A stretch of DNA of 64,000 nucleotides from Octopus sinensis (lineage: Eukaryota): contig NC_043002.1 of assembly GCF_006345805.1 (NCBI RefSeq), forward strand, positions 80,972,001 to 81,036,000, written 5' to 3'. Position numbers and translations under genes: made by a program. The stretch's first letter is position 1, and each line of letters starts with the position of its first letter. This document shows, piece after piece, positions 1 through 35,497 of this stretch. The notes beneath the pieces are model-generated. The model saw only the letters and a program-made list of their open reading frames with translations, searched no databases and was not told the origin of the DNA.

Positions 1-1958
1 CGTGGCTGAGGGCATGTCTGAGAGGGCCATTATGAACAGTAGTGGTCCCAGAACAGTGCCCTGCGGAACACCGCACACTATCTCCCAGTTTTCCAACTAT
101 GTTGAGATCACGCAGTTTGTGACATATCATTCCATGATCGACTTTATCAAAGGCCTTTGCAAAGTCGAGATATATCACTTCCACATTTGAGTGGTTGAGC
201 AGCCGTTTCAGCACCCAGTCATAGTGTTGTAGGAGCTGAGTTAAACAGCTTCTCCCTGGTCGGAAACCATGTTGGGTGTCGGGCAGCAAGTCATTTTCTT
301 CAAGGAAGGTGATCAGTTTCCTTCTGACTATTCGTTCCATGACCTTGCTGATGTGTGAGGTCAGAGAGATAGGTCTGTAGTTCTTGGCCTCCGCTCTGCT
401 ACCTCCTTTATGAATGGGGCATATTTTACCTTCCTTCAGTTTTCTTGGAAGTTTGCCAGCTGCAAGGAAGCTCTGAAAGAGGAACTGCAGTGGTCTTGCT
501 AGGACTCTCTTACATACTTTTATGAGGATTACCGGGAATACATCGGGGCCAGTAGCTGAGTCTGTTTTCATTTCATCTATAGCCTTTATTATATCGTCTT
601 CCTTTATATCGATGTAATTTATCGTCGCCGCCTCCGATTTTATATCTGCAGTGGTAAAGAAGTCAGTTGGATTGGTGATTTGGAGATGCCCAAGGGGTAG
701 AGTGAAAACACTCTTGAATTGCTCATTCAGTATTTCACTTACTCTCATTGGTTTTCCTGTAAGTATGCCATCCTTTTCAAGGAGTGGCCCTATTCTACAG
801 TGCACCGTAGCTGTTTCTTTGGCATACCTGTAGAAAGCTCTGGGGTTAGATTTTATGTTGTCTATAGCCCAGGCTTCTTTGTCTGCTCTTTCCTTTTCAT
901 GGGAGAGTTGCAGACATTTTTCGATTTCCAACAGTTTTATTTTTAGGCGGGATTTTTCACTGCTTTCCATCTTTCAAATGTTTGTTTAGGCGATTTGAAA
1001 TTTTTGTACGCCGTCTCATTAAAATTGTCCTCTCTCTGGGGATTTTGTTCTTGTGTACAGTGGCCTTTCTCTCTGGGACACATTTGTAGCATATGGCTTG
1101 CATTACAGACATGAATTGTTGAAGTTTCACGTCGATGTCTGGCGAGGAGAGACATTTAGGCCAGTTTTGTTTGAGGATCTCTTTCTCAATTTGTTTCCAG
1201 TTTGCCTTATGGTAGTTCAAGCTGGAAAGATTCTGAGGGTTTCTTGTAGGCTGCATGTCCGTGCTCTCTTTTGGCCCGTACATGGTCAGCTCTACCATGT
1301 TGTGATCCGAGAGTAGTGTCGGTGTCACTTTCACATTATGGATGAGATCCATGTCATTTGTGAAGCAGAGATCCAGTGTGTTACCTGCCCTGGTTGGTTG
1401 GAGTATTACTTGCTCCATGTACAGGGTGTTGATGAGGTTCAGGAGGGACCTCGCCTGTCCTCGTTCACATCTTGTCATTCCTGGAAGAGAAAGGCCCTCA
1501 GGCCATCTGACATTGGGTAGATTGAAGTCTCCCATGAGAAGTACACTTATGTGTTGTTCTAATGTGATTAGAACTTCTATTTTTATAAGGCAGTCTTCAA
1601 ACTTGCCTACATGGCTTGGGGCATCTGGAGGGCGATATGTAGCACACACAACTACATCGAGTTGCCTTATGTGTACAATTAGTGTGTCACACACCGAGTT
1701 TGAGTATGACAAAAGGACCTGGGGTGTGAGCTCCTCACGGATGTACATAGCAACTCCTCCATGACTCCTTTCTTTTCTGTCGGTCCGTAGTACAACATTC
1801 TGTGGTATGTGTAATTCCGCATCTGCTATGTCCGGTTTCAGGTGCGTTTCCGTAAGTGCTATGCATAAGGCTTGATTGCATGCGACAAAGTCTCTCAGGA
1901 ACGGGATTTTTGTCCTGTTACTGAGTGTTTGCAGTCCTCTGATGTTCAGTAGGAGCAT
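1..1958 (-). pseudogene. LINE ORF2 (APE endonuclease plus reverse transcriptase), disrupted
   Basis: The track ORF 957-2102 holds the endonuclease. After a frameshift near 960 another frame continues through the RT. Near position 80, GKLG joins VCGVPQG out of frame, so the usual intervening RT segment is missing (internal deletion). Confidence 0.9.
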
Positions 1959-2827
1959 TGAGGTGAGGTGTATGTTGTTGCCGGCGGTGTCCATCTTGGG
2001 TCTGTTTGCTGTGGTGGTCTTGTATATTGTGGGTAGTCCCACCTGTGAGCTTGGGTTTGATGAAGCCAGGTCAGCTGCTGTACAATCTTTTGTGCCATGC
2101 ACAAAAAAGATTCTTGCTCAGCAGCTGCCCTTTCAACAACGTCATGTTGGCGGTTTGTGGCACGCACCACATCTGCGTACCTCCGTTTTTGGGCAGGTGG
2201 TGCGTGGTCCATCCCTTTTCCTTGTGTTTATCTGTTTTCGTTTTGTGTCTCTGCGGCAGGGTCCCCGATGTGCAAAGCGGCAGCCTGCACCTTCCTCTCC
2301 ATGCCAGCAGGTACCTCTCAGGTAGAACCTACACACCCGTGTGCGCTGTTTGTTTCCATCCCTTGCGGTTCCACTTCTATTCCTGGCTGTTTCACCCTTT
2401 GGTCCTGCTTGAGCTTTTCCTTTAGCTCTTTCAGTCCTTCTTTTAGTTCTTCCCTGGGTTCTCCATCTCCATGGCCCTTGCTGCCGGTAGGAGCATTTGT
2501 ACTTGGGTTCACTTCCCGGGCAGGTTTCTCACTCAAAACCCCTTCCCGGGTATCCACCAGGTGGGGGTGACTTCTTTCATCGTCTCCATCCTTGCCATCT
2601 TTGCCCTGCTCGTTCTCAAAAATGGCATCAAGTGTGCCAATGTGCGACCGTACAAGCGCATAGGAGCGTTTGAATTCCTGTTTCTTTCGCTCTATCTGAG
2701 CTACCGTCCTTTTGTAGTTGCCGCTCTTCAGCGCAGCCGTAATCACATTGTTTGGGTTTTCTCCGTCGGCGCATTTCCAGGCTCATACGAACAACGCCAG
2801 TTCGTCAGGTCTCCAGGCTCTGGACAT
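1946..2827 (-). pseudogene. LINE ORF1 with a coiled-coil-like region and a CCCH-type zinc finger, broken into frames
   Basis: It begins MSRAWRPDELALFV*AWKC with a premature TGA. It continues in track ORFs 2318-2746 (EELKEGLKELKEKLKQ), 2142-2336 (CRFYLRGTCWHGEEGAGCRFAH) and 1946-2212 (RRYADVVR). Confidence 0.7.
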
Positions 2828-2935
2828 GTTGGATAATCTATCTATTTATTTATCTATCTAATTATGTTCAAAATTCAATAGTGTGACAGCGGGCAGAGAA
2901 GAAGCAGAGAAAGAAAGCGACTGTGCACCTAGAGA

Positions 2936-3100
2936 GATTGAGAGCTGAGAGAAGATAAGAAGATATATATTTATGCGACTATATATTTAGAGAAATTGAG
3001 AAGGTGAGAGAGGAAAGATTGAGAGCTGAGAGAAGATAAGAAGATATATATTTATGCGACTATATATTTAGAGAGATTGAGAAGGTGAGAGAGGAAAGAT
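2936..3100. repeat. Tandem duplication, ~81 bp x2, AG-rich
   Basis: GATTGAGAGCTGAGAGAAGATAAGAAG starts at 2936 and at 3017. Confidence 0.85.
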
Positions 3101-3133
3101 TGTGACAGAGAGAAGTGGAGAAGTGAAGAGACA

Positions 3134-3935
3134 AGGGAAGATTGAATGGCTGAAAGAAGAGAGATGGTGTGATAGAGAGAAGTAAAGAGACAGAGGGAGA
3201 AAGAGAGGGGGGTTACGAAGCTGAAATAGAAATGAGGGATTAAGAAAATGAAAGATTGTTAAAGAGAGGGAAGATTGAATGGCTGAAAGAAGAGAGATGG
3301 TGTGATAGAGAGAAGTAAAGAGACAGAGGGAGAAAGAGAGGGGGTTACGAAAGCTGCAATAGAAATGAGGGATTAAGAAAATGAAAGATTGTTAAAGAGA
3401 GGGAAGATTGAATGGCTGAAAGAAGAGAGATGGTGTGATAGAGAGAAGTAAAGAGACAGAGGGAGAAAGAGAGGGGGTTACGAAAGCTGCAATAGAAATG
3501 AGGGATTAAGAAAATGAAAGATTGTTAAAGAGAGGAAGATTGAATGGCTGAAAGAAGAGAGATGGTGTGATAGAGAGAAGCAAAGAGACAGAGGGAGAAA
3601 GAGAGGGGGTTACGAAAGCTGCAATAGAAATGAGGGATTAAGAAAATGAAAGATTGTTAAAGAGAGGGAAGATTGAATGGCTGAAAGAAGAGAGATGGTG
3701 TGATAGAGAGAAGTAAAGAGACAGAGGGAGAAAGAGAGGGGGTTACGAAAGCTGCAATAGAAATGAGGGATTAAGAAAATGAAAGATTGTTAAAGAGAGG
3801 GAAGATTGAATGGCTGAAAGAAGAGAGATGGTGTGATAGAGAGAAGTAAAGAGACAGAGGGAGAAAGAGAGGGGGTTACGAAAGCTGCAATAGAAATGAG
3901 GGATTAAGAAAATGAAAGATTGTTAAAGAGAGGAG
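3134..3935. repeat. Tandem array, 133-bp unit, about 6 copies
   Basis: AAGATTGAATGGCTG recurs at 3138, 3271, 3404, 3536, 3669 and 3802. The units are near-identical and have no unique spacers. Confidence 0.95.
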
Positions 3936-4572: not shown

Positions 4573-5076
4573 ATAGAAGATGAAAGTGATACTTATTCCA
4601 ACGATGTAGTCTGGGTTTTTGTGCTTTACGGAATTATTTTCCAGGAGAGATGTTTCTTTTTCCTTCTTACAGGAGATAAATTAATTCAATGAGTGTCCAC
4701 CATGTGCGTTTTCGGCGAAATGAAAATTACTGTATTTGGCTTCAGGCAAAATATATTACGTTTTTGATTAATATATTTTTAACCAATGTGTTGTAAGTGG
4801 ACTTTATGATTTGAATTTTACGTTTTGTGACTTTCAGTAGGCTATTTCGCCGATTTAAGCAAACTTTTCTGTTTTTTTAACAGAGCAAAGGCGAGACACG
4901 TCTTTCTCTGGGGGAACCGGAAGTATATATATATATATGTGTGTATGATTGTATGTATGTATGTATGTATGTATGTATGTATGTATGTATGTATGTATGT
5001 ATGTATGTATACATATATTTACATGTATGTATGTATGTATGTATGTATGTATGTATGTATGTATACATATATTTAC

Positions 5077-10150: not shown

Positions 10151-13100
10151 CGCAACATTCCCAACAAACACGATGTAAACAACGAAGGGGAGCCTAATGA
10201 TTATGATAATATAAAAAATAAAATAATCTTAGAACTGAAAACCACAGAACCCAAATGTACCACCGACCATACCTCCCAAGAATAAAAATAAACGAAATAA
10301 CAACACCAATTATAAACAGCATAAATCTAGCCGTCCTGAACTAGCCACTGAAACAAAAAAAAGTGATATCACTGAAAAAATGACTTGATATACGCAGCAG
10401 CCACTGCAGCCACAAAAGAAGCTGGATACTCACCCAAACCCGCCCAAACAGGAGTACCACCACCCAAACAAACCCTGTGGATAAATAACATCCAAAACAA
10501 AATTTAAAAAATTAAAAAGACCTGTCGATTCTTAATGAAATCAGCAAAGAATCAACGCTACTGAGCAACAAAAAGAGAAAAAAATGCTCCGCAAATATAA
10601 CATCACAGAAAAAGATTTGCCGGAGATAAAAGAAAAGCTGAAGCAAGATATCCTTGCCAAAGCTCAAAGGATCCGCCGGTACGAGAAACGCCAACGCTTC
10701 TTTGAACAGAACAAAAAGTTCAACACCAACCCCAAAAAGTTCTACCAAGATCTGGGAAAAATAAAATAGAAGTCACTGCAGCACCAACGGCAGAAGAATT
10801 GGAAGAATTCTGGAGAGAAATATGGTCGGCGAACGAACAGCCAAAAAAAGGAGTATCAAAAAATAAAACTCGGCATCTGAACAACTTTGGACCCCCATAA
10901 CAACTGAAGAGGTCACCCAGGCACTGCAAAAACTAAGCAACTGAAGGCACCTGGCATGACAAGATCCCCAACTTCTGGTTGTGAAATATCTAACAGGAAT
11001 GCACAAAAAGCTGGCTGAAAACTTTAACAGCATACTAGCAGAGCCAGAGAAAATGCCTGAATGGCTCACGAAGGGGAAAACCATCTTAATTCCCAAATCA
11101 AATGAAACAGCAAAACCAGAAAACTACAGACCAATAACCTGCCTCCCTACTATGTTCAAGGCATTTACTGCAGTGATATCGCAAAGGCTGAACAAGCACC
11201 TGGACGAAAACAAACTGTTCCCAGAAGAAGAGCAGAAAGGATGCCGCAAAGGCTCATATGGCTGTAAAGATAACTAATGATTAATAAAGCCGTAACTGAA
11301 GACAGCCACAGAAAGAAGAAAGGCCTCAGTATGGCCTGGATTGACTACAAAAAGGCGTTTGATAGCATCCCCCACACATGGATCTTGAAACACTAGCCAT
11401 TAACAAAGTAGCACCAACAATCATAAAATTCATAGAGCACTCTATGAATAAATGGCAAACAGTCCTACATCTCCAAACAAAAGAGGGACTCATGAAAACC
11501 AAAGACATCCCCATCAGAAGAGGAATATTCCAGGGAGACACGCTCTCTCCACTCCTTTTCTGCTTGGCACTGTCACCTCTATCTGATATGCTAAATAGAA
11601 CTGGATGCGGATATAAATGTTACGGCAAAACGATCAGCCACCTTTTATATGGATGACCTAAAACTATACGCTGCAAATGACAAACAGCTGGAAACACTAT
11701 TAAAGACAGTTCATGGATTTACCAAAGAAATAGATATGAAATTTGGATTAGAAAAATGCGCCAAAGTAACCATGAAAAGAGGAAAACTAGTTAAGAGTAA
11801 CAACATCACACTAGATAAAACCAATGAAATAAAAGAATTAGACCAAAGCCAAACTTACAAATACTTAGGAATCCATGAACTAGATAAGACACAACACACA
11901 CAAATGAAAGAGAAAAAAAAAAAGAATATTATAGACGAGTTAGATCAATACTAAAAACAGAGCTCAATGCTAAAAACAAGATAATAGGTATCAACACTTT
12001 AGCTGTCCCAGTTATAAGTTACAGCTACAATATCCTTAACTGGACACGAAATGAACTGTCCAAAATAGATAGGAAAACAAGAAAAATACTGACAGGATCT
12101 AGGATGCATCACCCAAAATCTGACATAGAAAGACTATATATACAACGTATAGAAGGTGGTAGAGGCCTTATACAGCTGGAAAACTACTATAAAATAACCA
12201 CCATAGGACTGCAAAAATACCTACTTCAGACGGAAGGAAAACTGATCCAGATAGCAGCAAAACACGAGCAAAACAAAAAACTGTTCTCAGTATTTAAGGA
12301 AGCTGACAATACAAACAAGAAATCATATCACCTAATAAACACGAAGAAGAAGAAGAAGAGATGAAGAAACAACAAAAGCTATAAAACAAATGAAATCCAA
12401 ACTAAAAATAGAACAGCAACGAACCATGATAAAACGATGGCAAGAAAATCCCTTCATGGTAAATACTGCACTAAACTAAACGCAAAAGAAATAGACAAAG
12501 AAAGATCCCAGCAATGGTTGAGAAGCTCAGGACTCAAAGCAGAAACAGAGGGATTTTTAATTGCAGCACAAGACCAAAGCCTCCCCACCAGAAATTACCA
12601 AAAACATGTAATGAAAAGAAATATTACAAGTAACTGCAGAATATGTGGAGATGGACAAGAAACAATAAATCATATTATCTCTAGCTGCCCAGTCCTGGCT
12701 AAGAAGGAATATATTCACAGACATGACAGAGTTGGAACCTACATACACTGGAAGCTATGCCAACATTATGGAATAACAACAGAAAAAAGATGGTATAGGC
12801 ACACACCAGAAAAGTTTGCAGAAAACGAGAAAGCAACAATACTCTGGGATATGCCGATACACAGATAGAGAAATTAAGGCCAACAGACCAGATATAGTTG
12901 TCAGAGATCATGAAGAAAAAAAATGCTTCTAATTGATGTATCAATACCGGCAGATGACAACGTGTCTCTAAAAGAAATGGAGAAACTCTCAAAATACAAA
13001 GACCTGGAAATAGAGGTAACTAGAATGTGGAATCTGAAAACAGAAACAATTCCTATCATAGTAGGTGCATTAGGCATGATAAAAAAATATTCAGACAAAT

Positions 13101-13500: not shown

Positions 13501-14787
13501 CGAGGGACGTTCAATAAGTAATGCCCTTGACCCACTTGCAGTTGTTTGAGCTAGCTGAAATTTTGCATGTGCAATCATTTATATCTCTATAGAGAAAGTG
13601 ACAAAGTACAGCTCTGAACTAATTGTGGTTTCCGATTTACAGGTGTTTGAACTGAGTCAAGTGTGAAATGGAGCCTGTTGAGTGTCGAGCAGTGATCCGG
13701 TTTTTGTATTTGAAAGGACGCACACCACGGGAGACTTTTGATGAAATGAAAGTAACTTATGGTGATGATGCCCCATCATATGACCTTGTAAAACGCTGGT
13801 ATCGGGAATTCAAACATGGTCGGAACTCTGTGGAAACAGCTCCCAGATCTGGTCGCCCCCCGTTCTGCCATTGATGAGGCATCAGTCCGTCAAGTTGAGG
13901 CTGCCATTTGAGGCTGCATAATTATTCGCCAAATAGCCCATGAGGTCAAGATTAGTACCGGGTCTGTGGAAACTATCATTCATGACCATTTGCATATGCA
14001 AAAAGTGTCTGCCAGATGGATTCCCAGGTTGCTCACGCCTTTCCAGAAGCAAGAACGCGTCGAGTGCTCGAGGATGAATTTGGAGATGGGCCAAGAAGAT
14101 GAGTCAAAGGTTTTCAAAAGACTGATTACACAGGATGAAACCTGGGTCCATCAGGATGATCCAGAGACCAAAGCCCAGTCAATGCAGTGGGAGCACCGTG
14201 ACTTACCCCCTCCAAAGAAGGCAAGGGTGCAGCCCTCCGCTGGCAAGGTCATGCTCACAGTCTTCTGGGACCAGGACGGAGTAGTGATGACAGATTTCCT
14301 GGCAAAGGGTACCACAATTACAGGAGCCTATTATGCTTCACTTTTGAGGAAATTAAGAGAAGTTATCAAAATCAAGAGGCGGGGCAAGATCAGCAAAGGC
14401 ATCCTCCTCCTGCAGGACAACGCTCCGGTCCACAACTCGCTTGTCGCCAGATCAGAAGCACAGGCGTATGGCTATGAACTCCTCCCCCATCCCCCTACTT
14501 TCCTGACCTTGCACCCTCTGATTTTCACCTCTTCCCAGTCATGAGGTTGTTTTTGAAAGGAAAGCGTTTCCCAGATGATGCAGCCTTGATTTCTGAAGTC
14601 ACGTTCATTTTGGAGGACCAAGCTGGGGTCTTCTACAAAAACGGTCTCCAGAGCTGCATCAAGCAATGGAATAAATGCGTAACTCTGGGTGGTTTCTATG
14701 TAGAAAAAGACTAATAACTGTGCTAAGTTCCGTTGCTCTACTGCTATGGGAAGTGGGTCAGGGGCATTACTTATTGAACGCCCCTCG
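13501..14787 (+). mobile_element. Full-length mariner DNA transposon (irritans/Hsmar2-like by terminal sequence), 1287 bp
   Basis: TIRs of about 37 bp (CGAGGGACGTTCAATAAGTAATGCCCTTGACCCACTT and its near-perfect inverse ending at 14787). TA duplications at 13499-13500 and 14788-14789. Confidence 0.95.
13668..14714 (+). pseudogene. Mariner D,D34D transposase, disrupted
   Basis: Motifs MEPVECRAVIRFLYLKG, RSGRP, ARWIPRLL, TQDETW, LLQDNAPVH and PDLAPSDF. Frameshift and stop around 13860-13920, and a frameshift near 14497. Confidence 0.92.
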
Positions 14788-15315: not shown

Positions 15316-15682
15316 AGAGCCAGTCGTTTAGATTGACCTCAGTATGCAACTGGTATTTAATTTATCGACCAAGCAACGATGAAACCCAAAGTCGAAGTCG
15401 ACCTCGGCAGAATTTGAACTCAGAACGTAAAGACAGACGAAATACCTATTTTTTCTACTACCCAAAAGGGGCTAAACACAGATAGGACAAACAAGGTCAG
15501 ACAAAAGGATTAAGTCGATTACATCGACACCAGTGCGTAACTGGTACTTAATTTATTGAAACCGAAAGGATGAAAGGCAAAGTCGACCTCGGCGGAATCT
15601 GAACTCAGAACGTAGTGGCCGACGAAATACGGCTACACATTTCGTCCGGCGTGCTAACGTTTCTGCCAGCTCGCCACCTTGA
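15316..15682 (-). mobile_element. SINE family B, two co-oriented copies (partial 15316-15445, complete 15450-15682)
   Basis: Minus-strand head GGCGAGCTGGCAGAAACGTTAGC, B box GAGTTCAGATTCC, and conserved core GGTCGACTTTGCCTTTCATCCTTTCGG. Confidence 0.88.
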
Positions 15683-16088
15683 CTTGTGTTAATATTATTT
15701 GAGATATATAAAAATATATTTTGATAGTTGTAGATTCTATTTACTTTATTATTTTGTCTGTTATATTTTTTATTTGTTCTTTTAGTTGAAAAGTTAACGC
15801 TCACGCTCCTAAACATAGGCATTTGAATTAATTTTTTTTTTACAATCCAGCAGTCCTTTCACACAGAATTTCGTATGTCTTTAAACCAAAGGTCTGAAGA
15901 GACTTATGTAAATAGATATGAATTGTTTATAAATCAAATAATGTATGTAACTCGAAACAAATTTTTGGCTCTTTTGGGTTTTTACTGATTTTTTATGTTA
16001 TATTATATTTTATTCATAGTATGTTATGTTATATTATGATATAAATGAATTATTGGATTATCAATTGAATCTATTTAATTTATTGTTT

Positions 16089-33234: not shown

Positions 33235-33900
33235 CAAATTTTAGCACAAGGCCGGCAGTTTTAGGGGGTGGGGGTACACTATTACATCAATCTCATACAT
33301 AAGTATCAACTGAAACTTATTTTATAGACCCGAAAAGGTTAAAAATGCAAAGTCGACCTCGGTGGAACTTGAACTCAGAGCGTAAAGAAATAGGAAATAC
33401 CACTAAGCATTTTGCCCAGCATGCTAACGGTTCTGCTAGATCGTCGCTTTAGTGTTCATTATATATTGATTTCAAATTTCTGCACAAGGTCATCAGTTTA
33501 GGGGAGGGAGTAAGTCTCTTACATTGACCCGAGTATTCAACTGGTATTTATTTTATCAACCCTGAAACGATGAAATGCAAAGTCATCCCTCGTTGGAATT
33601 TGAACTCAGAACGTAAAGAAGTACGAAACACCACTAAGCATTTCGCCCGGCGTGCTAACGGTTCTTATTTCTTTACTGCCCACAAGGGGATAAACATAGA
33701 GGGGACAAACAAAGATAGACAAAGGGATTAAGTCGATTGCATCGACCCCAATGCGTAACTGGTATTTCATTTATCGACTCCGAAAGGATGAAAGGCAAAG
33801 TCGACCTTGGCGGAATTTGAACGCATAACGTAGCGGCAGACGAAATACCACAAAGCATTTCGCCCGGCATGCTAACGTTTCTGTCAGCACGCTGCCTTAA
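33232..33900 (-). mobile_element. Three head-to-tail SINE family B copies (33232-33450, 33458-33665, 33666-33900)
   Basis: AAAGTCGACCT.GG.GGAA.TTGAAC and GCATGCTAACG-like motifs recur three times in the same orientation. Confidence 0.88.
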
Positions 33901-34200
33901 GCGGACGCCGAACTAAGGCATGCGACTTGAGGTTGAGATGCTTTTGGAAAACAACTCGGGTCCGGCTACGGTTCCGGCTTAGAGGCGTTCAGCCGTTATC
34001 GCTCAGAGGCAGCCTGGCACCACCGCTATATCGAGCGAGCGCGCAAACCGTTGCTCTGATCCCGTGGTTCCTCTCGTACTGGAACGGGATAGCCGTAGCC
34101 GTAGTTGACGTTGCGGGCGCCCGCCTAAGGTCAGCGGAAGCGTTGGCGGCAGTGACGGACGACGCGCAAGCGAGCCGCCACTGCGCACCGAACCCCCGAC
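33901..34200 (-). rRNA. LSU (28S-type) rRNA-derived fragment containing the sarcin-ricin loop; not a complete rRNA gene
   Basis: The minus strand reads ATCCCGT-TCC-AGTACGAGAGGAAC-C-ACGGGAT...CTGAACGCCTCTAAG. These are the universal SRL and the downstream conserved eukaryotic LSU motif, at the expected spacing. The segment is GC-rich within AT-rich DNA. Confidence 0.85.
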
Positions 34201-34729
34201 GCTAACGGTTCTGCCACAGCTCACCAACACAGACTTCACTATCTACCATACATTAAATAGTATTAGGAGTCAATTTCTCTCATGCCATAGACTTATGAGA
34301 AGTTATTTCCCTTAGCTCATTGTTGAATTTTTTTTTTTTTAATTACGAGGCCAGGCTCTATACAGCCCATTGCTAATTCTGCCATCTCAGCGCCATTCAT
34401 AGCGTTCACTATTACAGACATTTTATTATACATAAAATAATAATAGTATAAGTTAATTTCTCACAAAGCATCATCGTATCACTTTACTGTCATTAAAATA
34501 ATTAAATTATATTCCATGTCAGTGTTATTGATTTCTTCTCCTTTCTTTTAAATAATCTAATTTCCCCACCGCCGCTACAACAACGAACTTCCCTCACCTC
34601 TTACCACAGCTGTCACAATTTTTATTTTTCCTATTTTAAATATAAACAAACATTACAATTGTTAATGTATGTTTAAGCTCAGTGTGTATGTGTGGTGGTG
34701 ATGGAGGAGGTGATTGGTAACAGTACTGA

Positions 34730-34731
34730 TA

Positions 34732-34768
<37 letters not shown>

Positions 34769-35336
34769 CGATGATGACGATGATGATGACGATGATGACG
34801 ATGATGACGATGATGACGATGACGACGATGACGATGATGACGATGATGACGATAATGACGATGATGACGATGATGACGATGATGATGATGATGATGACGA
34901 TGATGACGATGATGACGATGATGACGATGATGATGATGACGATGATGACGATGATGACGATGATGACGATGATGATGATGATGATGACGATGATGATGAT
35001 GATGATGATGATGACGACGATGATGATGACGATGATGACGATGATGATGATGACGATGATGACGATGATGACGATGATGACGATGATGATGATGATGATG
35101 ATGACGATGATGACGATGATGACGATGATGACGATGATGATGATGACGATGATGACGATGATGACGATGATGACGATGATGATGATGACGATGATGACGA
35201 TGATGACGATGATGACGATGATGATGATGACGATGATGACGATGATGACGATGATGACGATGATGACGATGATGATGATGACGATGATGACGATGATGAC
35301 GATGATGACGATGATGACGATGATGATGATGATGAC

Positions 35337-35378
<42 letters not shown>

Positions 35379-35412
35379 GATGACGACGATGATGATGACG
35401 ATGATGATGATG
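34730..35412. repeat. (GAT/GAC)n compound trinucleotide tract, ~680 bp
   Basis: Seen directly; a GATGATGAC higher-order period dominates. Confidence 0.95.
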
Positions 35413-35459
35413 GTAACGGCTGTTGAGATTCTTGTGGCGGTGCTGCTGCTGCTGCTATG

Positions 35460-35497
<38 letters not shown>

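What the first reader, a model, noticed from the sequence alone, without database searches (positions are those of the whole stretch)
33901..34225. Structured, highly divergent 28S rRNA fragment with an intact sarcin-ricin loop, fused to SINE pieces
Seen: on the minus strand the order is a 25-nt SINE-B head (GGTGAGCTGTGGCAGAACCGTTAGC, 34201-34225), 300 nt of GC-rich sequence, then a complete SINE-B, all in the same sense. The insert has the universal SRL AGTACGAGAGGAAC (34067-34080), closed by a perfect ATCCCGT/ACGGGAT helix, and the conserved CTGAACGCCTCTAAG (33978-33992). Established: these are LSU rRNA domain VI landmarks. Compared from memory with the common eukaryotic sequence (CCTGC/GCAGG; TTGGCT/AGCCAA), the differences are compensatory (CCCGT/ACGGG; TCGCT/AGCGG), and a further 9-bp hairpin lies at 34150-34183. 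The source was therefore a functional but divergent rRNA rather than a randomly decayed copy. Inference: this is a template-switch chimera, or a member of an rRNA-derived SINE lineage in which a pol III head drives an SRL-containing RNA. Alternatively the fragment came from a parasite.
Basis: partly seen in the sequence, partly recalled or inferred. Interest (0 to 1): 0.72.

Follow-up and report, generated by a model that had tools for sequence, protein, structure and literature searches.

The report
Octopus 28S fragment retrocopied with SINE
A 304-base piece of the octopus's own, naturally unusual, 28S ribosomal RNA was reverse-transcribed together with a SINE and pasted into an older SINE, so it is an ordinary dead retrocopy and not a parasite gene or a new rRNA-driven mobile element.

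Summary
Infernal places 34102-33951 (-) on eukaryotic LSU rRNA helices H94-H97 (91.8 bits). 41 of 44 pairs are canonical and 17 differ from the Rfam consensus on both sides.

The interpretation needs correcting in three ways.
1. The 25-nt "SINE head" is not fused to the rRNA as a promoter. It is the left part of an older SINE that was split by the insertion. A perfect 12-nt target-site duplication (AGAACCGTTAGC) flanks a ~535-nt unit made of the rRNA piece plus a full-length SINE. Joining the flanks restores an intact SINE.
2. All 304 GC-rich bases are one contiguous stretch of 28S: an expansion segment, then H94-H97, then the start of ES39. An independent copy (L108) has the same order plus the conserved upstream strand.
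3. The "divergent" source is the host. A published Octopus bimaculoides 28S primer matches 34054-34035 exactly (20/20), and no other fetched LSU matches it.

Related marine LSU genes are 89% identical in the core. The best explanation is a single LINE-mediated retro-insertion, probably by template switching from the SINE RNA's 5' end onto 28S rRNA. This is a known kind of event. Copy number in the genome could not be tested.

The parts
34201..34225 (-). 5' part (positions 1 to about 25) of the older target SINE ('SINE-X').
   Evidence: Aligns to the 5' end of the other SINE copies. Joined to 33653 onwards it gives a seamless full-length SINE.
34201..34212 (-). Target-site duplication, copy 1 (AGAACCGTTAGC)
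   Evidence: Perfect 12/12 direct repeat with 33654-33665.
33897..34200 (-). Retro-copied contiguous piece of host 28S rRNA (304 nt, GC 0.62, CpG o/e 1.31). It is 5'-truncated inside an expansion segment and ends in the start of the ES39 region.
   Evidence: Colinear with L108, which also carries the conserved H92/H93 strand. No second copy of any part in the window.
34103..34200 (-). Lineage-specific expansion segment between the H73/H93 strand and H94. It contains the 9-bp hairpin at 34183-34150.
   Evidence: Not matched by the Rfam LSU model. Homologous to the same position in L108. Real rDNAs L005 and L101 also have a GC-rich hairpin insertion at this site.
33951..34102 (-). LSU rRNA domain VI core, helices H94-H97, including the sarcin-ricin loop (34080-34067) and the H97 loop (33992-33978)
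   Evidence: Infernal RF02543, 91.8 bits, model 3010-3158. 41/44 pairs canonical. 88.6-89.4% identical to genuine LSU genes L109 and L111-L115.
34035..34054 (-). Exact match to the reverse complement of the published O. bimaculoides 28S primer H88-5'-RACE-R (in H96)
   Evidence: Primer taken from the supplement of PMC13321053. 20/20 match in the window, none expected by chance. 0 of 115 fetched loci match.
33899..33950 (-). 28S sequence 3' of H94 (start of the ES39/H98 region). rRNA homology with L108 ends at about 33899.
   Evidence: Alignment with L108.
34116..34128 (-). 5' strand of a 13-bp helix that encloses domain VI
   Evidence: Pairs with 33909-33897. Pair probabilities about 1.0. 5 of 2000 dinucleotide shuffles do as well. 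Weaker but present in L108.
33897..33909 (-). 3' strand of the 13-bp helix. It ends exactly at the junction with the SINE. The last two bases (AA, 33898-33897) may be junction filler rather than rRNA.
33666..33896 (-). Full-length tRNA-derived SINE ('SINE-Y', subfamily with the tail ..GTAAAGAAATAA), co-inserted 3' of the rRNA piece in the same sense
   Evidence: Alignment with 7 other copies in the window. It has no TSD of its own.
33654..33665 (-). Target-site duplication, copy 2 (AGAACCGTTAGC)
33460..33653 (-). Remainder of the split target SINE-X (from position about 26 to its ..AAATTTGAAAT(AT)n tail)
   Evidence: Empty-site reconstruction aligns end to end with intact copies of the same subfamily.

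Best explanation
This is a dead retrocopy made in a single LINE-mediated event (target-primed reverse transcription) in the octopus germ line. Reverse transcription began on the 3' tail of a SINE RNA (SINE-Y) and copied it to its 5' end. It then continued on a molecule of the host's own 28S rRNA, entering in the ES39 region just 3' of a stable 13-bp helix. It copied back through H97, H96, the sarcin-ricin hairpin and H94 into an octopod-specific expansion segment, where the cDNA ended. The ~535-nt cDNA was integrated inside an older SINE (SINE-X), which it split after about position 25, creating a 12-bp target-site duplication.

Shown: the TSD and empty site; the rRNA identity and intact helices; the contiguity of the 304 nt as 28S; the exact match to an octopus 28S primer; and the single TSD around the composite. 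Inferred: template switching as the joining step, and the absence of any function. The 'divergence' is a property of cephalopod/octopod 28S domain VI, not of the copy.
For: LSU H94-H97 match at 91.8 bits. 41/44 canonical pairs, 17 compensatory against the consensus. Perfect 12-nt TSD and a seamless empty-site SINE. Only the composite has a TSD. SINE-Y is complete to its 5' end and in the same sense as the rRNA. L108 carries the conserved strand, then the ES, core and 3' flank in the same order. Genuine LSU genes L109 and L111-L115 are 88.6-89.4% identical in the core and share the derived UUUUAUCCUACC signature. The O. bimaculoides primer H88-5'-RACE-R matches 20/20 at 34054-34035 and matches no other fetched locus. 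The second octopus primer matches L111/L112 at 24/26, against 9-12 mismatches in unrelated eukaryotes and in loci that lack this part of the LSU. The window is octopod DNA. Sense-oriented 28S/LINE-1 chimeras of similar size (median 269 nt) are documented in primates (PMC13174262).
Against: I could not align the insert to a full octopus rDNA unit, because no eukaryotic genome or rRNA database was available. Host origin therefore rests on one exact 20-mer plus relatedness to group A LSUs. In the same supplement the 'Octopus' DMS primer list is identical to the human list and includes a human-type H96 primer. This is either a copy-paste slip or conflicting evidence. Template switching cannot be told apart from RNA ligation or read-in transcription using a single copy. 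No octopod rDNA ORF with this sequence surfaced in the protein-indexed collections. Three non-canonical pairs and 8/57 mismatches at highly conserved positions could be post-insertion decay or real octopod states.
Confidence: 0.85

Rival explanations
1. Read-in (5' transduction) instead of template switching. A SINE-Y copy sits inside the ES39 region of a 28S gene or an rDNA orphon. A long transcript running through 28S into that SINE was reverse-transcribed from the SINE tail and 5'-truncated at 34200.
For: The rRNA piece is contiguous and in the same sense as SINE-Y, with only 0-2 extra bases at the junction. This model would give the same architecture and the same single TSD.
Against: It needs an rDNA unit that carries a SINE and an RNA whose 3' end is the SINE tail. 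No downstream 28S sequence follows SINE-Y. The rRNA/SINE junction falls exactly at SINE position 1 and at the end of a 13-bp rRNA helix, which fits a jump at the template's 5' end. Not testable here.
Confidence: 0.1
2. A propagating composite SINE lineage in which a 28S-derived module (ES plus domain VI) forms the 5' body of a SINE-Y-tailed element.
For: SINE28 shows that 28S-derived SINE-like elements exist (PMC4994717). Stand-alone H94-H97 or 28S 3'-region copies recur in other genomes: L108; L110; the L004 group, which may be one locus seen in five samples; and P0083, P0086, P0091 and P0093.
Against: The other copies do not share this junction or these boundaries. L108 starts at H92 and runs further into ES39 with no sense SINE-Y. 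There is no second copy in 64 kb. The piece has no recognisable pol III promoter of its own. The A-box-bearing head belongs to the target SINE. ORF-based look-ups found no identical copy.
Confidence: 0.04
3. Foreign origin: rRNA of a parasite or symbiont (dicyemid, Aggregata, other) captured by the host's reverse transcriptase.
For: The core is only about 60% identical to most eukaryotic LSU cores. There are no exact hits to its SRL hairpin in the metagenome or prokaryote collections.
Against: Exact 20/20 match to an O. bimaculoides 28S primer in the most idiosyncratic stretch. Both octopus primers lie within 2 mismatches of the related group A LSUs. A second, older copy of the same rRNA type exists (L108). 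A germ-line insertion of parasite RNA fused to a host SINE is mechanistically demanding.
Confidence: 0.02
4. Assembly artefact: a chimeric read or a mis-join brought rRNA-derived sequence into a SINE cluster.
For: rRNA is abundant and SINE clusters are hard to assemble. No reads were available to me.
Against: A mis-join would not create a perfect 12-nt duplication whose removal restores an intact SINE. It would also not produce a junction exactly at the 5' end of a full-length SINE.
Confidence: 0.02

Closest known systems
LINE-mediated chimeric retrocopies formed with small or abundant RNAs (U6/L1, 5S/L1, and the 28S rRNA/LINE-1 chimeras catalogued in primates; PMC13174262)
   Same: An rRNA fragment of a few hundred nt sits at the 5' side of a retroelement in the same sense. 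One set of TSDs surrounds the whole unit. The proposed mechanism is template switching or RNA ligation during target-primed reverse transcription.
   Different: The 3' partner here is a full-length tRNA-derived SINE with a non-poly(A) tail, in an octopus, rather than an L1. The responsible LINE is unidentified. A different 28S region is captured (H94-H97 plus flanking ES).
SINE28 (mammalian 28S-derived SINE; PMC4994717)
   Same: 28S-derived sequence dispersed by retrotransposition and flanked by TSDs.
   Different: SINE28 derives from the extreme 3' end of 28S (human about 4819-5034), has its own A-rich tail and is reported as pol III-transcribed. The piece here is internal (model 3010-3158 plus ES), has no tail of its own and borrows a SINE's tail. 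No family is shown.
Ordinary rRNA retro-pseudogene fragments, e.g. L110, L108 and the L004/L032/L038/L045/L098 locus found here
   Same: Isolated LSU pieces that include the same H94-H97 module (model 3007-3161, 91-93 bits where Infernal still detects it), embedded in non-rDNA sequence that is AT-rich in L108 and L110.
   Different: Those copies are not joined to a sense SINE at their 3' end. The boundaries differ in L108 and L110.
Incirrate octopus 28S rRNA with the H88 break (preprint PMC13321053; PDB 9EHO)
   Same: This is the source molecule. The insert lies downstream of H88, and the published 5'-RACE primer for the 3' fragment anneals inside it.
   Different: The window copy is a genomic pseudogene fragment and not part of an rDNA unit. 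The H88 site itself is not included.

Membership tests
Eukaryotic LSU rRNA, domain VI (H94-H97) | Significant covariance-model match to RF02543 over the domain | tested here: met
   91.8 bits, E 7e-22, model 3010-3158.
Eukaryotic LSU rRNA, domain VI (H94-H97) | Universal SRL AGUACGAGAGGAAC and H97 loop; helices maintained by compensatory change | tested here: met
   Both motifs are exact. 41/44 canonical pairs, 17 changed on both sides against the consensus.
Host (octopus) 28S rRNA as the source | Sequence identity to octopus 28S | tested here: met
   20/20 match to the O. bimaculoides primer H88-5'-RACE-R at 34054-34035. 0 of 115 other loci match. This tests only 20 nt.
Host (octopus) 28S rRNA as the source | Colinear high identity over all 304 nt to an octopus rDNA unit or the 28S chain of PDB 9EHO | not testable with these tools
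   No eukaryotic genome, rRNA or PDB-RNA sequence search was available. Colinearity is shown only against the pseudogene L108.
Retrotransposed insertion (target-primed reverse transcription) | Target-site duplication and a reconstructable empty site | tested here: met
   12/12 TSD (AGAACCGTTAGC). The joined flanks give an intact SINE.
Single-event chimeric retrocopy (template switch or RNA ligation type) | One TSD around the composite and none around either half; partners in the same sense; 3' partner complete to its 5' end | tested here: met
Single-event chimeric retrocopy (template switch or RNA ligation type) | Direct evidence for the joining mechanism (non-templated bases, or recurrent acceptor sites across many loci) | tested here: inconclusive
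   Only a possible AA filler at 33898-33897. One locus only.
SINE28 | Derived from the extreme 3' end of 28S, with its own A-rich or simple-repeat tail | tested here: not met
   Covers model 3010-3158 plus flanking ES and stops about 240 model positions before the 28S 3' end. It has no tail, and the SINE-Y 5' end follows directly.
   The head is the 5' part of the split target SINE and lies outside the TSD-bounded insert.
   No copy elsewhere in the window. No identical ORF is on record. The host assembly was not searchable.
Foreign (parasite) rRNA | Best match to a non-host LSU | tested here: not met
   Exact octopus primer match. The nearest full LSU genes (89%) are themselves within 2 mismatches of both octopus primers. 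Parasite LSU sequences themselves were not available.

The most novel reading that the evidence does not exclude
The octopod-specific cleavage of 28S at H88 (preprint PMC13321053) releases a separate 3' rRNA fragment of roughly 1 kb. This free fragment could be unusually prone to capture by the SINE/LINE reverse transcriptase. In that case retrocopies of the region downstream of H88, such as this one and L108, would be over-represented in incirrate genomes, and some (rRNA module plus SINE tail) could have become a propagating composite element.
Probability: 0.07. Interest if true: 0.5.

Novelty: new member of a known kind. Interest (0 to 1): 0.2.

Why it matters
This is mainly a clarification. 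A sequence that looks like a foreign or novel structured RNA is the host's own rRNA, captured in a routine chimeric retro-insertion.

Two practical points follow. First, octopod and cephalopod 28S domain VI is so atypical (about 60% identity to other eukaryotes, an extra expansion segment of at least about 130 nt before H94, and a 13-bp helix closing the domain) that contamination or horizontal-transfer screens can mis-flag it. Second, the locus is a clean, TSD-bounded example showing that the octopus SINE/LINE machinery makes SINE-rRNA chimeras. That is relevant to how composite SINEs arise in a genome with hundreds of SINE families.

Tried and rejected
- Rfam at gathering threshold, and at E<=0.01 on the whole window, found nothing or only low-complexity miRNA-like noise. 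The LSU hit appears only when a small region is scanned.
- The second GC island at 41861-42621 is a (GGT)n microsatellite and is unrelated.
- The exact 28-nt SRL-hairpin pattern gave 0 hits in metagenome contigs and genome contigs.
- The first word-based protein search, using the ORF across the insert, gave no hits because of its length window.
- Exact-ORF look-ups for the insert ORFs and a LINE ORF found nothing on record.
- I considered a fragmented-rRNA (euglenozoan-type) source with a spacer processing stem, to explain the non-rRNA-looking flanks and the closing helix. I rejected it once L108 and the octopus primer showed the flanks are octopod expansion segments.
- I considered L052 (two SRL domains 424 nt apart) as a related element. 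It looks like a chimeric assembly and is only about 79% identical.
- I tried to identify SRR6291281 and SRR11869394 through the literature, with no hits.
- I tested for the octopus SINE in L108. The score equals the best shuffle, so it is not significant.
- The H88 TATG/CGTC diagnostic is absent from L111 and L112, so those are not incirrate rDNA.
- The B-box-like GGTTCGGTGCG at 34195-34185, next to the head, was considered as a promoter element. I dismissed it because of its spacing and because the head belongs to the target SINE.

Full report
OBSERVATION. On the minus strand the region reads as follows: GGTGAGCTGTGGCAGAACCGTTAGC (34225-34201), then 304 nt of GC-rich sequence (34200-33897; GC 0.62 against 0.35 for the window), then a full-length tRNA-derived SINE starting at about 33896. 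AGTACGAGAGGAAC lies at 34080-34067 and is the only copy in the window. It is closed by a perfect ATCCCGT/ACGGGAT stem. CTGAACGCCTCTAAG lies at 33992-33978, and a 9-bp hairpin lies at 34183-34150. Infernal against Rfam places 34102-33951 on the eukaryotic LSU model at positions 3010-3158 (H94, the H95 sarcin-ricin hairpin, H96 and H97) with 91.8 bits and E 7e-22. Scans of the whole window lose this hit to the speed filters. From that alignment, 41 of 44 pairs are canonical (35 Watson-Crick, 6 G.U). Against the Rfam consensus, 17 pairs differ on both sides and 3 on one side. Paired columns are 53% identical and unpaired columns 78%.

THE 'SINE HEAD' IS THE LEFT HALF OF A SPLIT TARGET. I aligned the eight SINE heads in the window. 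The SINE that follows the 'complete SINE' begins at GAACCGTTAGC, which are the very bases on which the 25-nt head ends. AGAACCGTTAGC occurs as a perfect 12-nt direct repeat at 34212-34201 and 33665-33654. Joining the left flank (up to 34201) to 33653 onwards gives a seamless full-length SINE of the subfamily with the ...CCCCTAAACTG..TTGTGC.AAATTTGAAAT(AT)n tail, carrying the same GAACCG diagnostic on both sides. So an older SINE (SINE-X) was split after about position 25 by a ~535-nt insertion (34200-33666) consisting of the GC-rich piece plus a full-length SINE of another subfamily (SINE-Y, tail ..GTAAAGAAATAA). Only the composite is flanked by a duplication. The flanks of SINE-Y alone share only TTAG, and the flanks of the rRNA piece alone share only CGTTAG, which is SINE-head similarity. 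This rules out a pol III head driving the SRL-containing RNA. It argues for one retrotransposition event rather than two, and it makes mis-assembly very unlikely.

ALL 304 NT ARE rRNA. Only 152 nt match the LSU model. The 98 nt upstream and 54 nt downstream do not, and the universally conserved strand that normally precedes H94 is missing. I also found a 13-bp helix between 34128-34116 and 33909-33897 that encloses the domain and ends exactly at the SINE junction. Its pair probabilities are about 1.0, and only 5 of 2000 dinucleotide shuffles do as well. To get comparison data I scanned the metagenome collection for CCAGTACGAGAGGAACC-N(55-85)-CTGAACGCCTCTAAG and obtained 107 eukaryotic LSU loci. 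In most of them the conserved strand ends 25-27 nt before the SRL hairpin. Complete rDNA units L005 and L101 carry a GC-rich hairpin of about 90 nt inserted at exactly this site, so the site can hold an expansion segment. An exhaustive HMMER search with the spurious 92-aa ORF that spans the insert found four rRNA-encoded 'proteins', and their DNA could be fetched. L108, a Logan contig, is a second and more decayed genomic copy. It contains, in order, the conserved strand GTTTAGACCATCGTGAGACAGGTTAGTTTTATCCTACC, sequence homologous to the window's 98-nt flank, a damaged core, and sequence homologous to the 54-nt flank and beyond. The window's 304 nt are therefore one contiguous stretch of 28S: a lineage-specific expansion segment, H94-H97, and the beginning of the ES39 region. 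The copy is 5'-truncated inside the expansion segment. The closing helix is best read as part of that rRNA's own structure. It is weaker but still formable in L108.

WHOSE rRNA? The core is a real outlier. Its median identity to 63 distinct eukaryotic cores is about 60%, and its nearest neighbour in that set is at 67%. It is not an orphan, though. L109 and L111-L115 are genuine LSU genes (L111 scores 2001 bits over model 1061-3401; Tara Oceans and other marine assemblies). Their domain VI is 88.6-89.4% identical to the window and shares its peculiarities and the derived UUUUAUCCUACC signature, but they have only about 14 nt where the window and L108 have the long expansion segment. I call these group A, and the window plus L108 group B. 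The window itself is octopod DNA, because its LINE endonuclease ORF has an Octopus sinensis protein as best annotated relative. A 2026 preprint on the octopus ribosome (PMC13321053) reports a break in H88 of incirrate 28S and accelerated substitution around it. Its supplement lists the O. bimaculoides primer H88-5'-RACE-R, GCGAGCGCGCAAACCGTTGC, which must anneal downstream of H88. The reverse complement of that primer matches the window at 34054-34035 at 20 of 20 positions, in the H96 stretch where the window differs from everything else. None of the 115 fetched loci match, and group A has two mismatches. The other octopus primer (H88-3'-RACE-F) matches L111 and L112 at 24 of 26 positions, against 9-12 mismatches in unrelated eukaryotes and in loci that lack this part of the LSU. 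L111 and L112 have a canonical H88 without the incirrate TATG/CGTC. The simplest reading is that group A is the 28S of close relatives of octopus (probably non-incirrate cephalopods; this is inference) and group B is octopod 28S. The fragment therefore comes from the host, and the parasite idea is not supported. One caveat applies. In the same supplement the 'Octopus' DMS primer list is identical to the human list, so I rely only on the RACE primers, and I could not align the insert to a full octopus rDNA.

MECHANISM. The architecture is: TSD, then a 5'-truncated 28S piece, then 0-2 filler bases, then a SINE complete to its first base with its own tail, then TSD. This is the architecture of chimeric retrocopies made during target-primed reverse transcription. 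The enzyme copies the SINE RNA from its tail to its 5' end, then continues on a second RNA. Sense-oriented 28S/LINE-1 chimeras with a median rRNA length of 269 nt are catalogued in primates and attributed to template switching or RNA ligation (PMC13174262). Active Dong-R4, CR1, RTE and L1-Tx1 LINEs and hundreds of SINE families are reported for O. vulgaris (PMC13282606), but the partner LINE here is unidentified. An rRNA fragment has no LINE-recognised tail, so riding on the 5' side of a SINE is a sensible route into the genome. The rivals are read-in transcription from a SINE sitting in an rDNA unit, RNA ligation, a propagating composite family, foreign origin, and mis-assembly. Each is weighed in its own section. 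None can be fully excluded for the joining step from one locus. The perfect TSD and a CpG o/e of 1.31 suggest a fairly young insertion. The three non-canonical pairs and 8 of 57 mismatches at highly conserved positions may be early decay or true octopod states.

COMPARISON AND NOVELTY. The element works like the known RNA/LINE chimeras and is a new example of that kind, in a cephalopod and with a SINE as the 3' partner. It is not a SINE28, which comes from the extreme 3' end of 28S and has its own A-rich tail (PMC4994717). Stand-alone copies of the same H94-H97 module occur elsewhere: L110 in a 98.7-kb AT-rich contig, the L004/L032/L038/L045/L098 locus in host-associated metagenomes, and several ORFs on long contigs. 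So such fragments are common genomic debris. I found no evidence of function. Interest is low. The useful by-products are the demonstration that octopod 28S domain VI is atypical enough to be mistaken for foreign RNA, and a pseudogene-based view of an octopod-specific expansion segment before H94.

NOT DONE. I could not determine copy number in the host genome, identity to a full octopus rDNA, read support, or the orthologous empty site, because no eukaryotic genome, rRNA or read database was available.

Noticed in passing
window 34103-34200 and 33897-33950; L108 380-860: Judged from two pseudogene copies, octopod-type 28S has a long expansion segment (at least 98 nt in the window, about 130-150 nt in L108) between the conserved H73/H93 strand and H94. 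Related group A LSUs have about 14 nt there and most eukaryotes 0-25 nt. It also has a 13-bp helix closing domain VI. This should be checked against the 28S chain of PDB 9EHO.
   Followed up: partly
L004 2217-2378, L045 778-939 (also L032, L038, L098): Five metagenome contigs share one locus or repeat with near-identical non-rRNA flanks. It contains an isolated, typical-metazoan H94-H97 module (LSU model 3007-3161, about 91 bits), with the same boundaries as the window's core.
   Followed up: partly
L110 10264-10418 (ENA ERZ21867824 ctg107593l, 98.7 kb); P0083, P0086, P0091, P0093: Group A-type 28S 3'-region fragments are embedded in long AT-rich, microsatellite-rich contigs next to a Tc1/mariner transposase. 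These are further rRNA retro-pseudogenes in an unidentified, probably cephalopod, genome.
   Followed up: partly
L052 1-1542: Metagenome contig in which LSU model 682-805 is joined directly to 3006-3399, and the H94/SRL region then starts again 424 nt later. It is preceded by coding-like sequence. It is probably a chimeric assembly, but the breakpoint is at the same domain V/VI boundary.
   Followed up: no
window 15400-15700 (SINE copy with head at 15653-15666, minus strand): A full SINE tail (..GGGTAGTAGAAAAAATA) is followed directly by a 5'-truncated SINE starting at GGTATTTCG. This is another head-to-tail SINE-SINE junction, either a chimera or a nested insertion.
   Followed up: no
window 34692-35463 and 41800-42600: Long trinucleotide microsatellites, (GAT)n and (GGT)n, give spurious 244-428-aa ORFs and many false C/D-box snoRNA and miRNA hits in permissive Rfam scans. 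A (CAGA)n run lies at 42580-42650.
   Followed up: yes
window 957-2102 (-), 12437-12868 (+), 13966-14544 (+): TE remnants: a LINE endonuclease ORF (Exo_endo_phos_2; 57% identical to an O. sinensis protein), a zf-RVT reverse-transcriptase C-terminal piece, and a mariner-type transposase fragment (Transposase_1).
   Followed up: partly
Supplement of PMC13321053 (DMS probing methods): The 'Octopus' amplicon primer list is character-for-character the same as the 'Human' list and contains human-type H96 and ES39 sequences. This is likely a copy-paste slip, and it conflicts with the octopus-specific RACE primer from the same supplement.
   Followed up: no
window 1-64000 (Rfam scans): The 152-nt LSU fragment scores 91.8 bits against a listed gathering score of 50. 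It is still missed when the whole 64-kb window is scanned, at gathering threshold or at E<=0.01, and is found only in a 2-kb scan. Short rRNA fragments can be false negatives of window-scale scans.
   Followed up: yes
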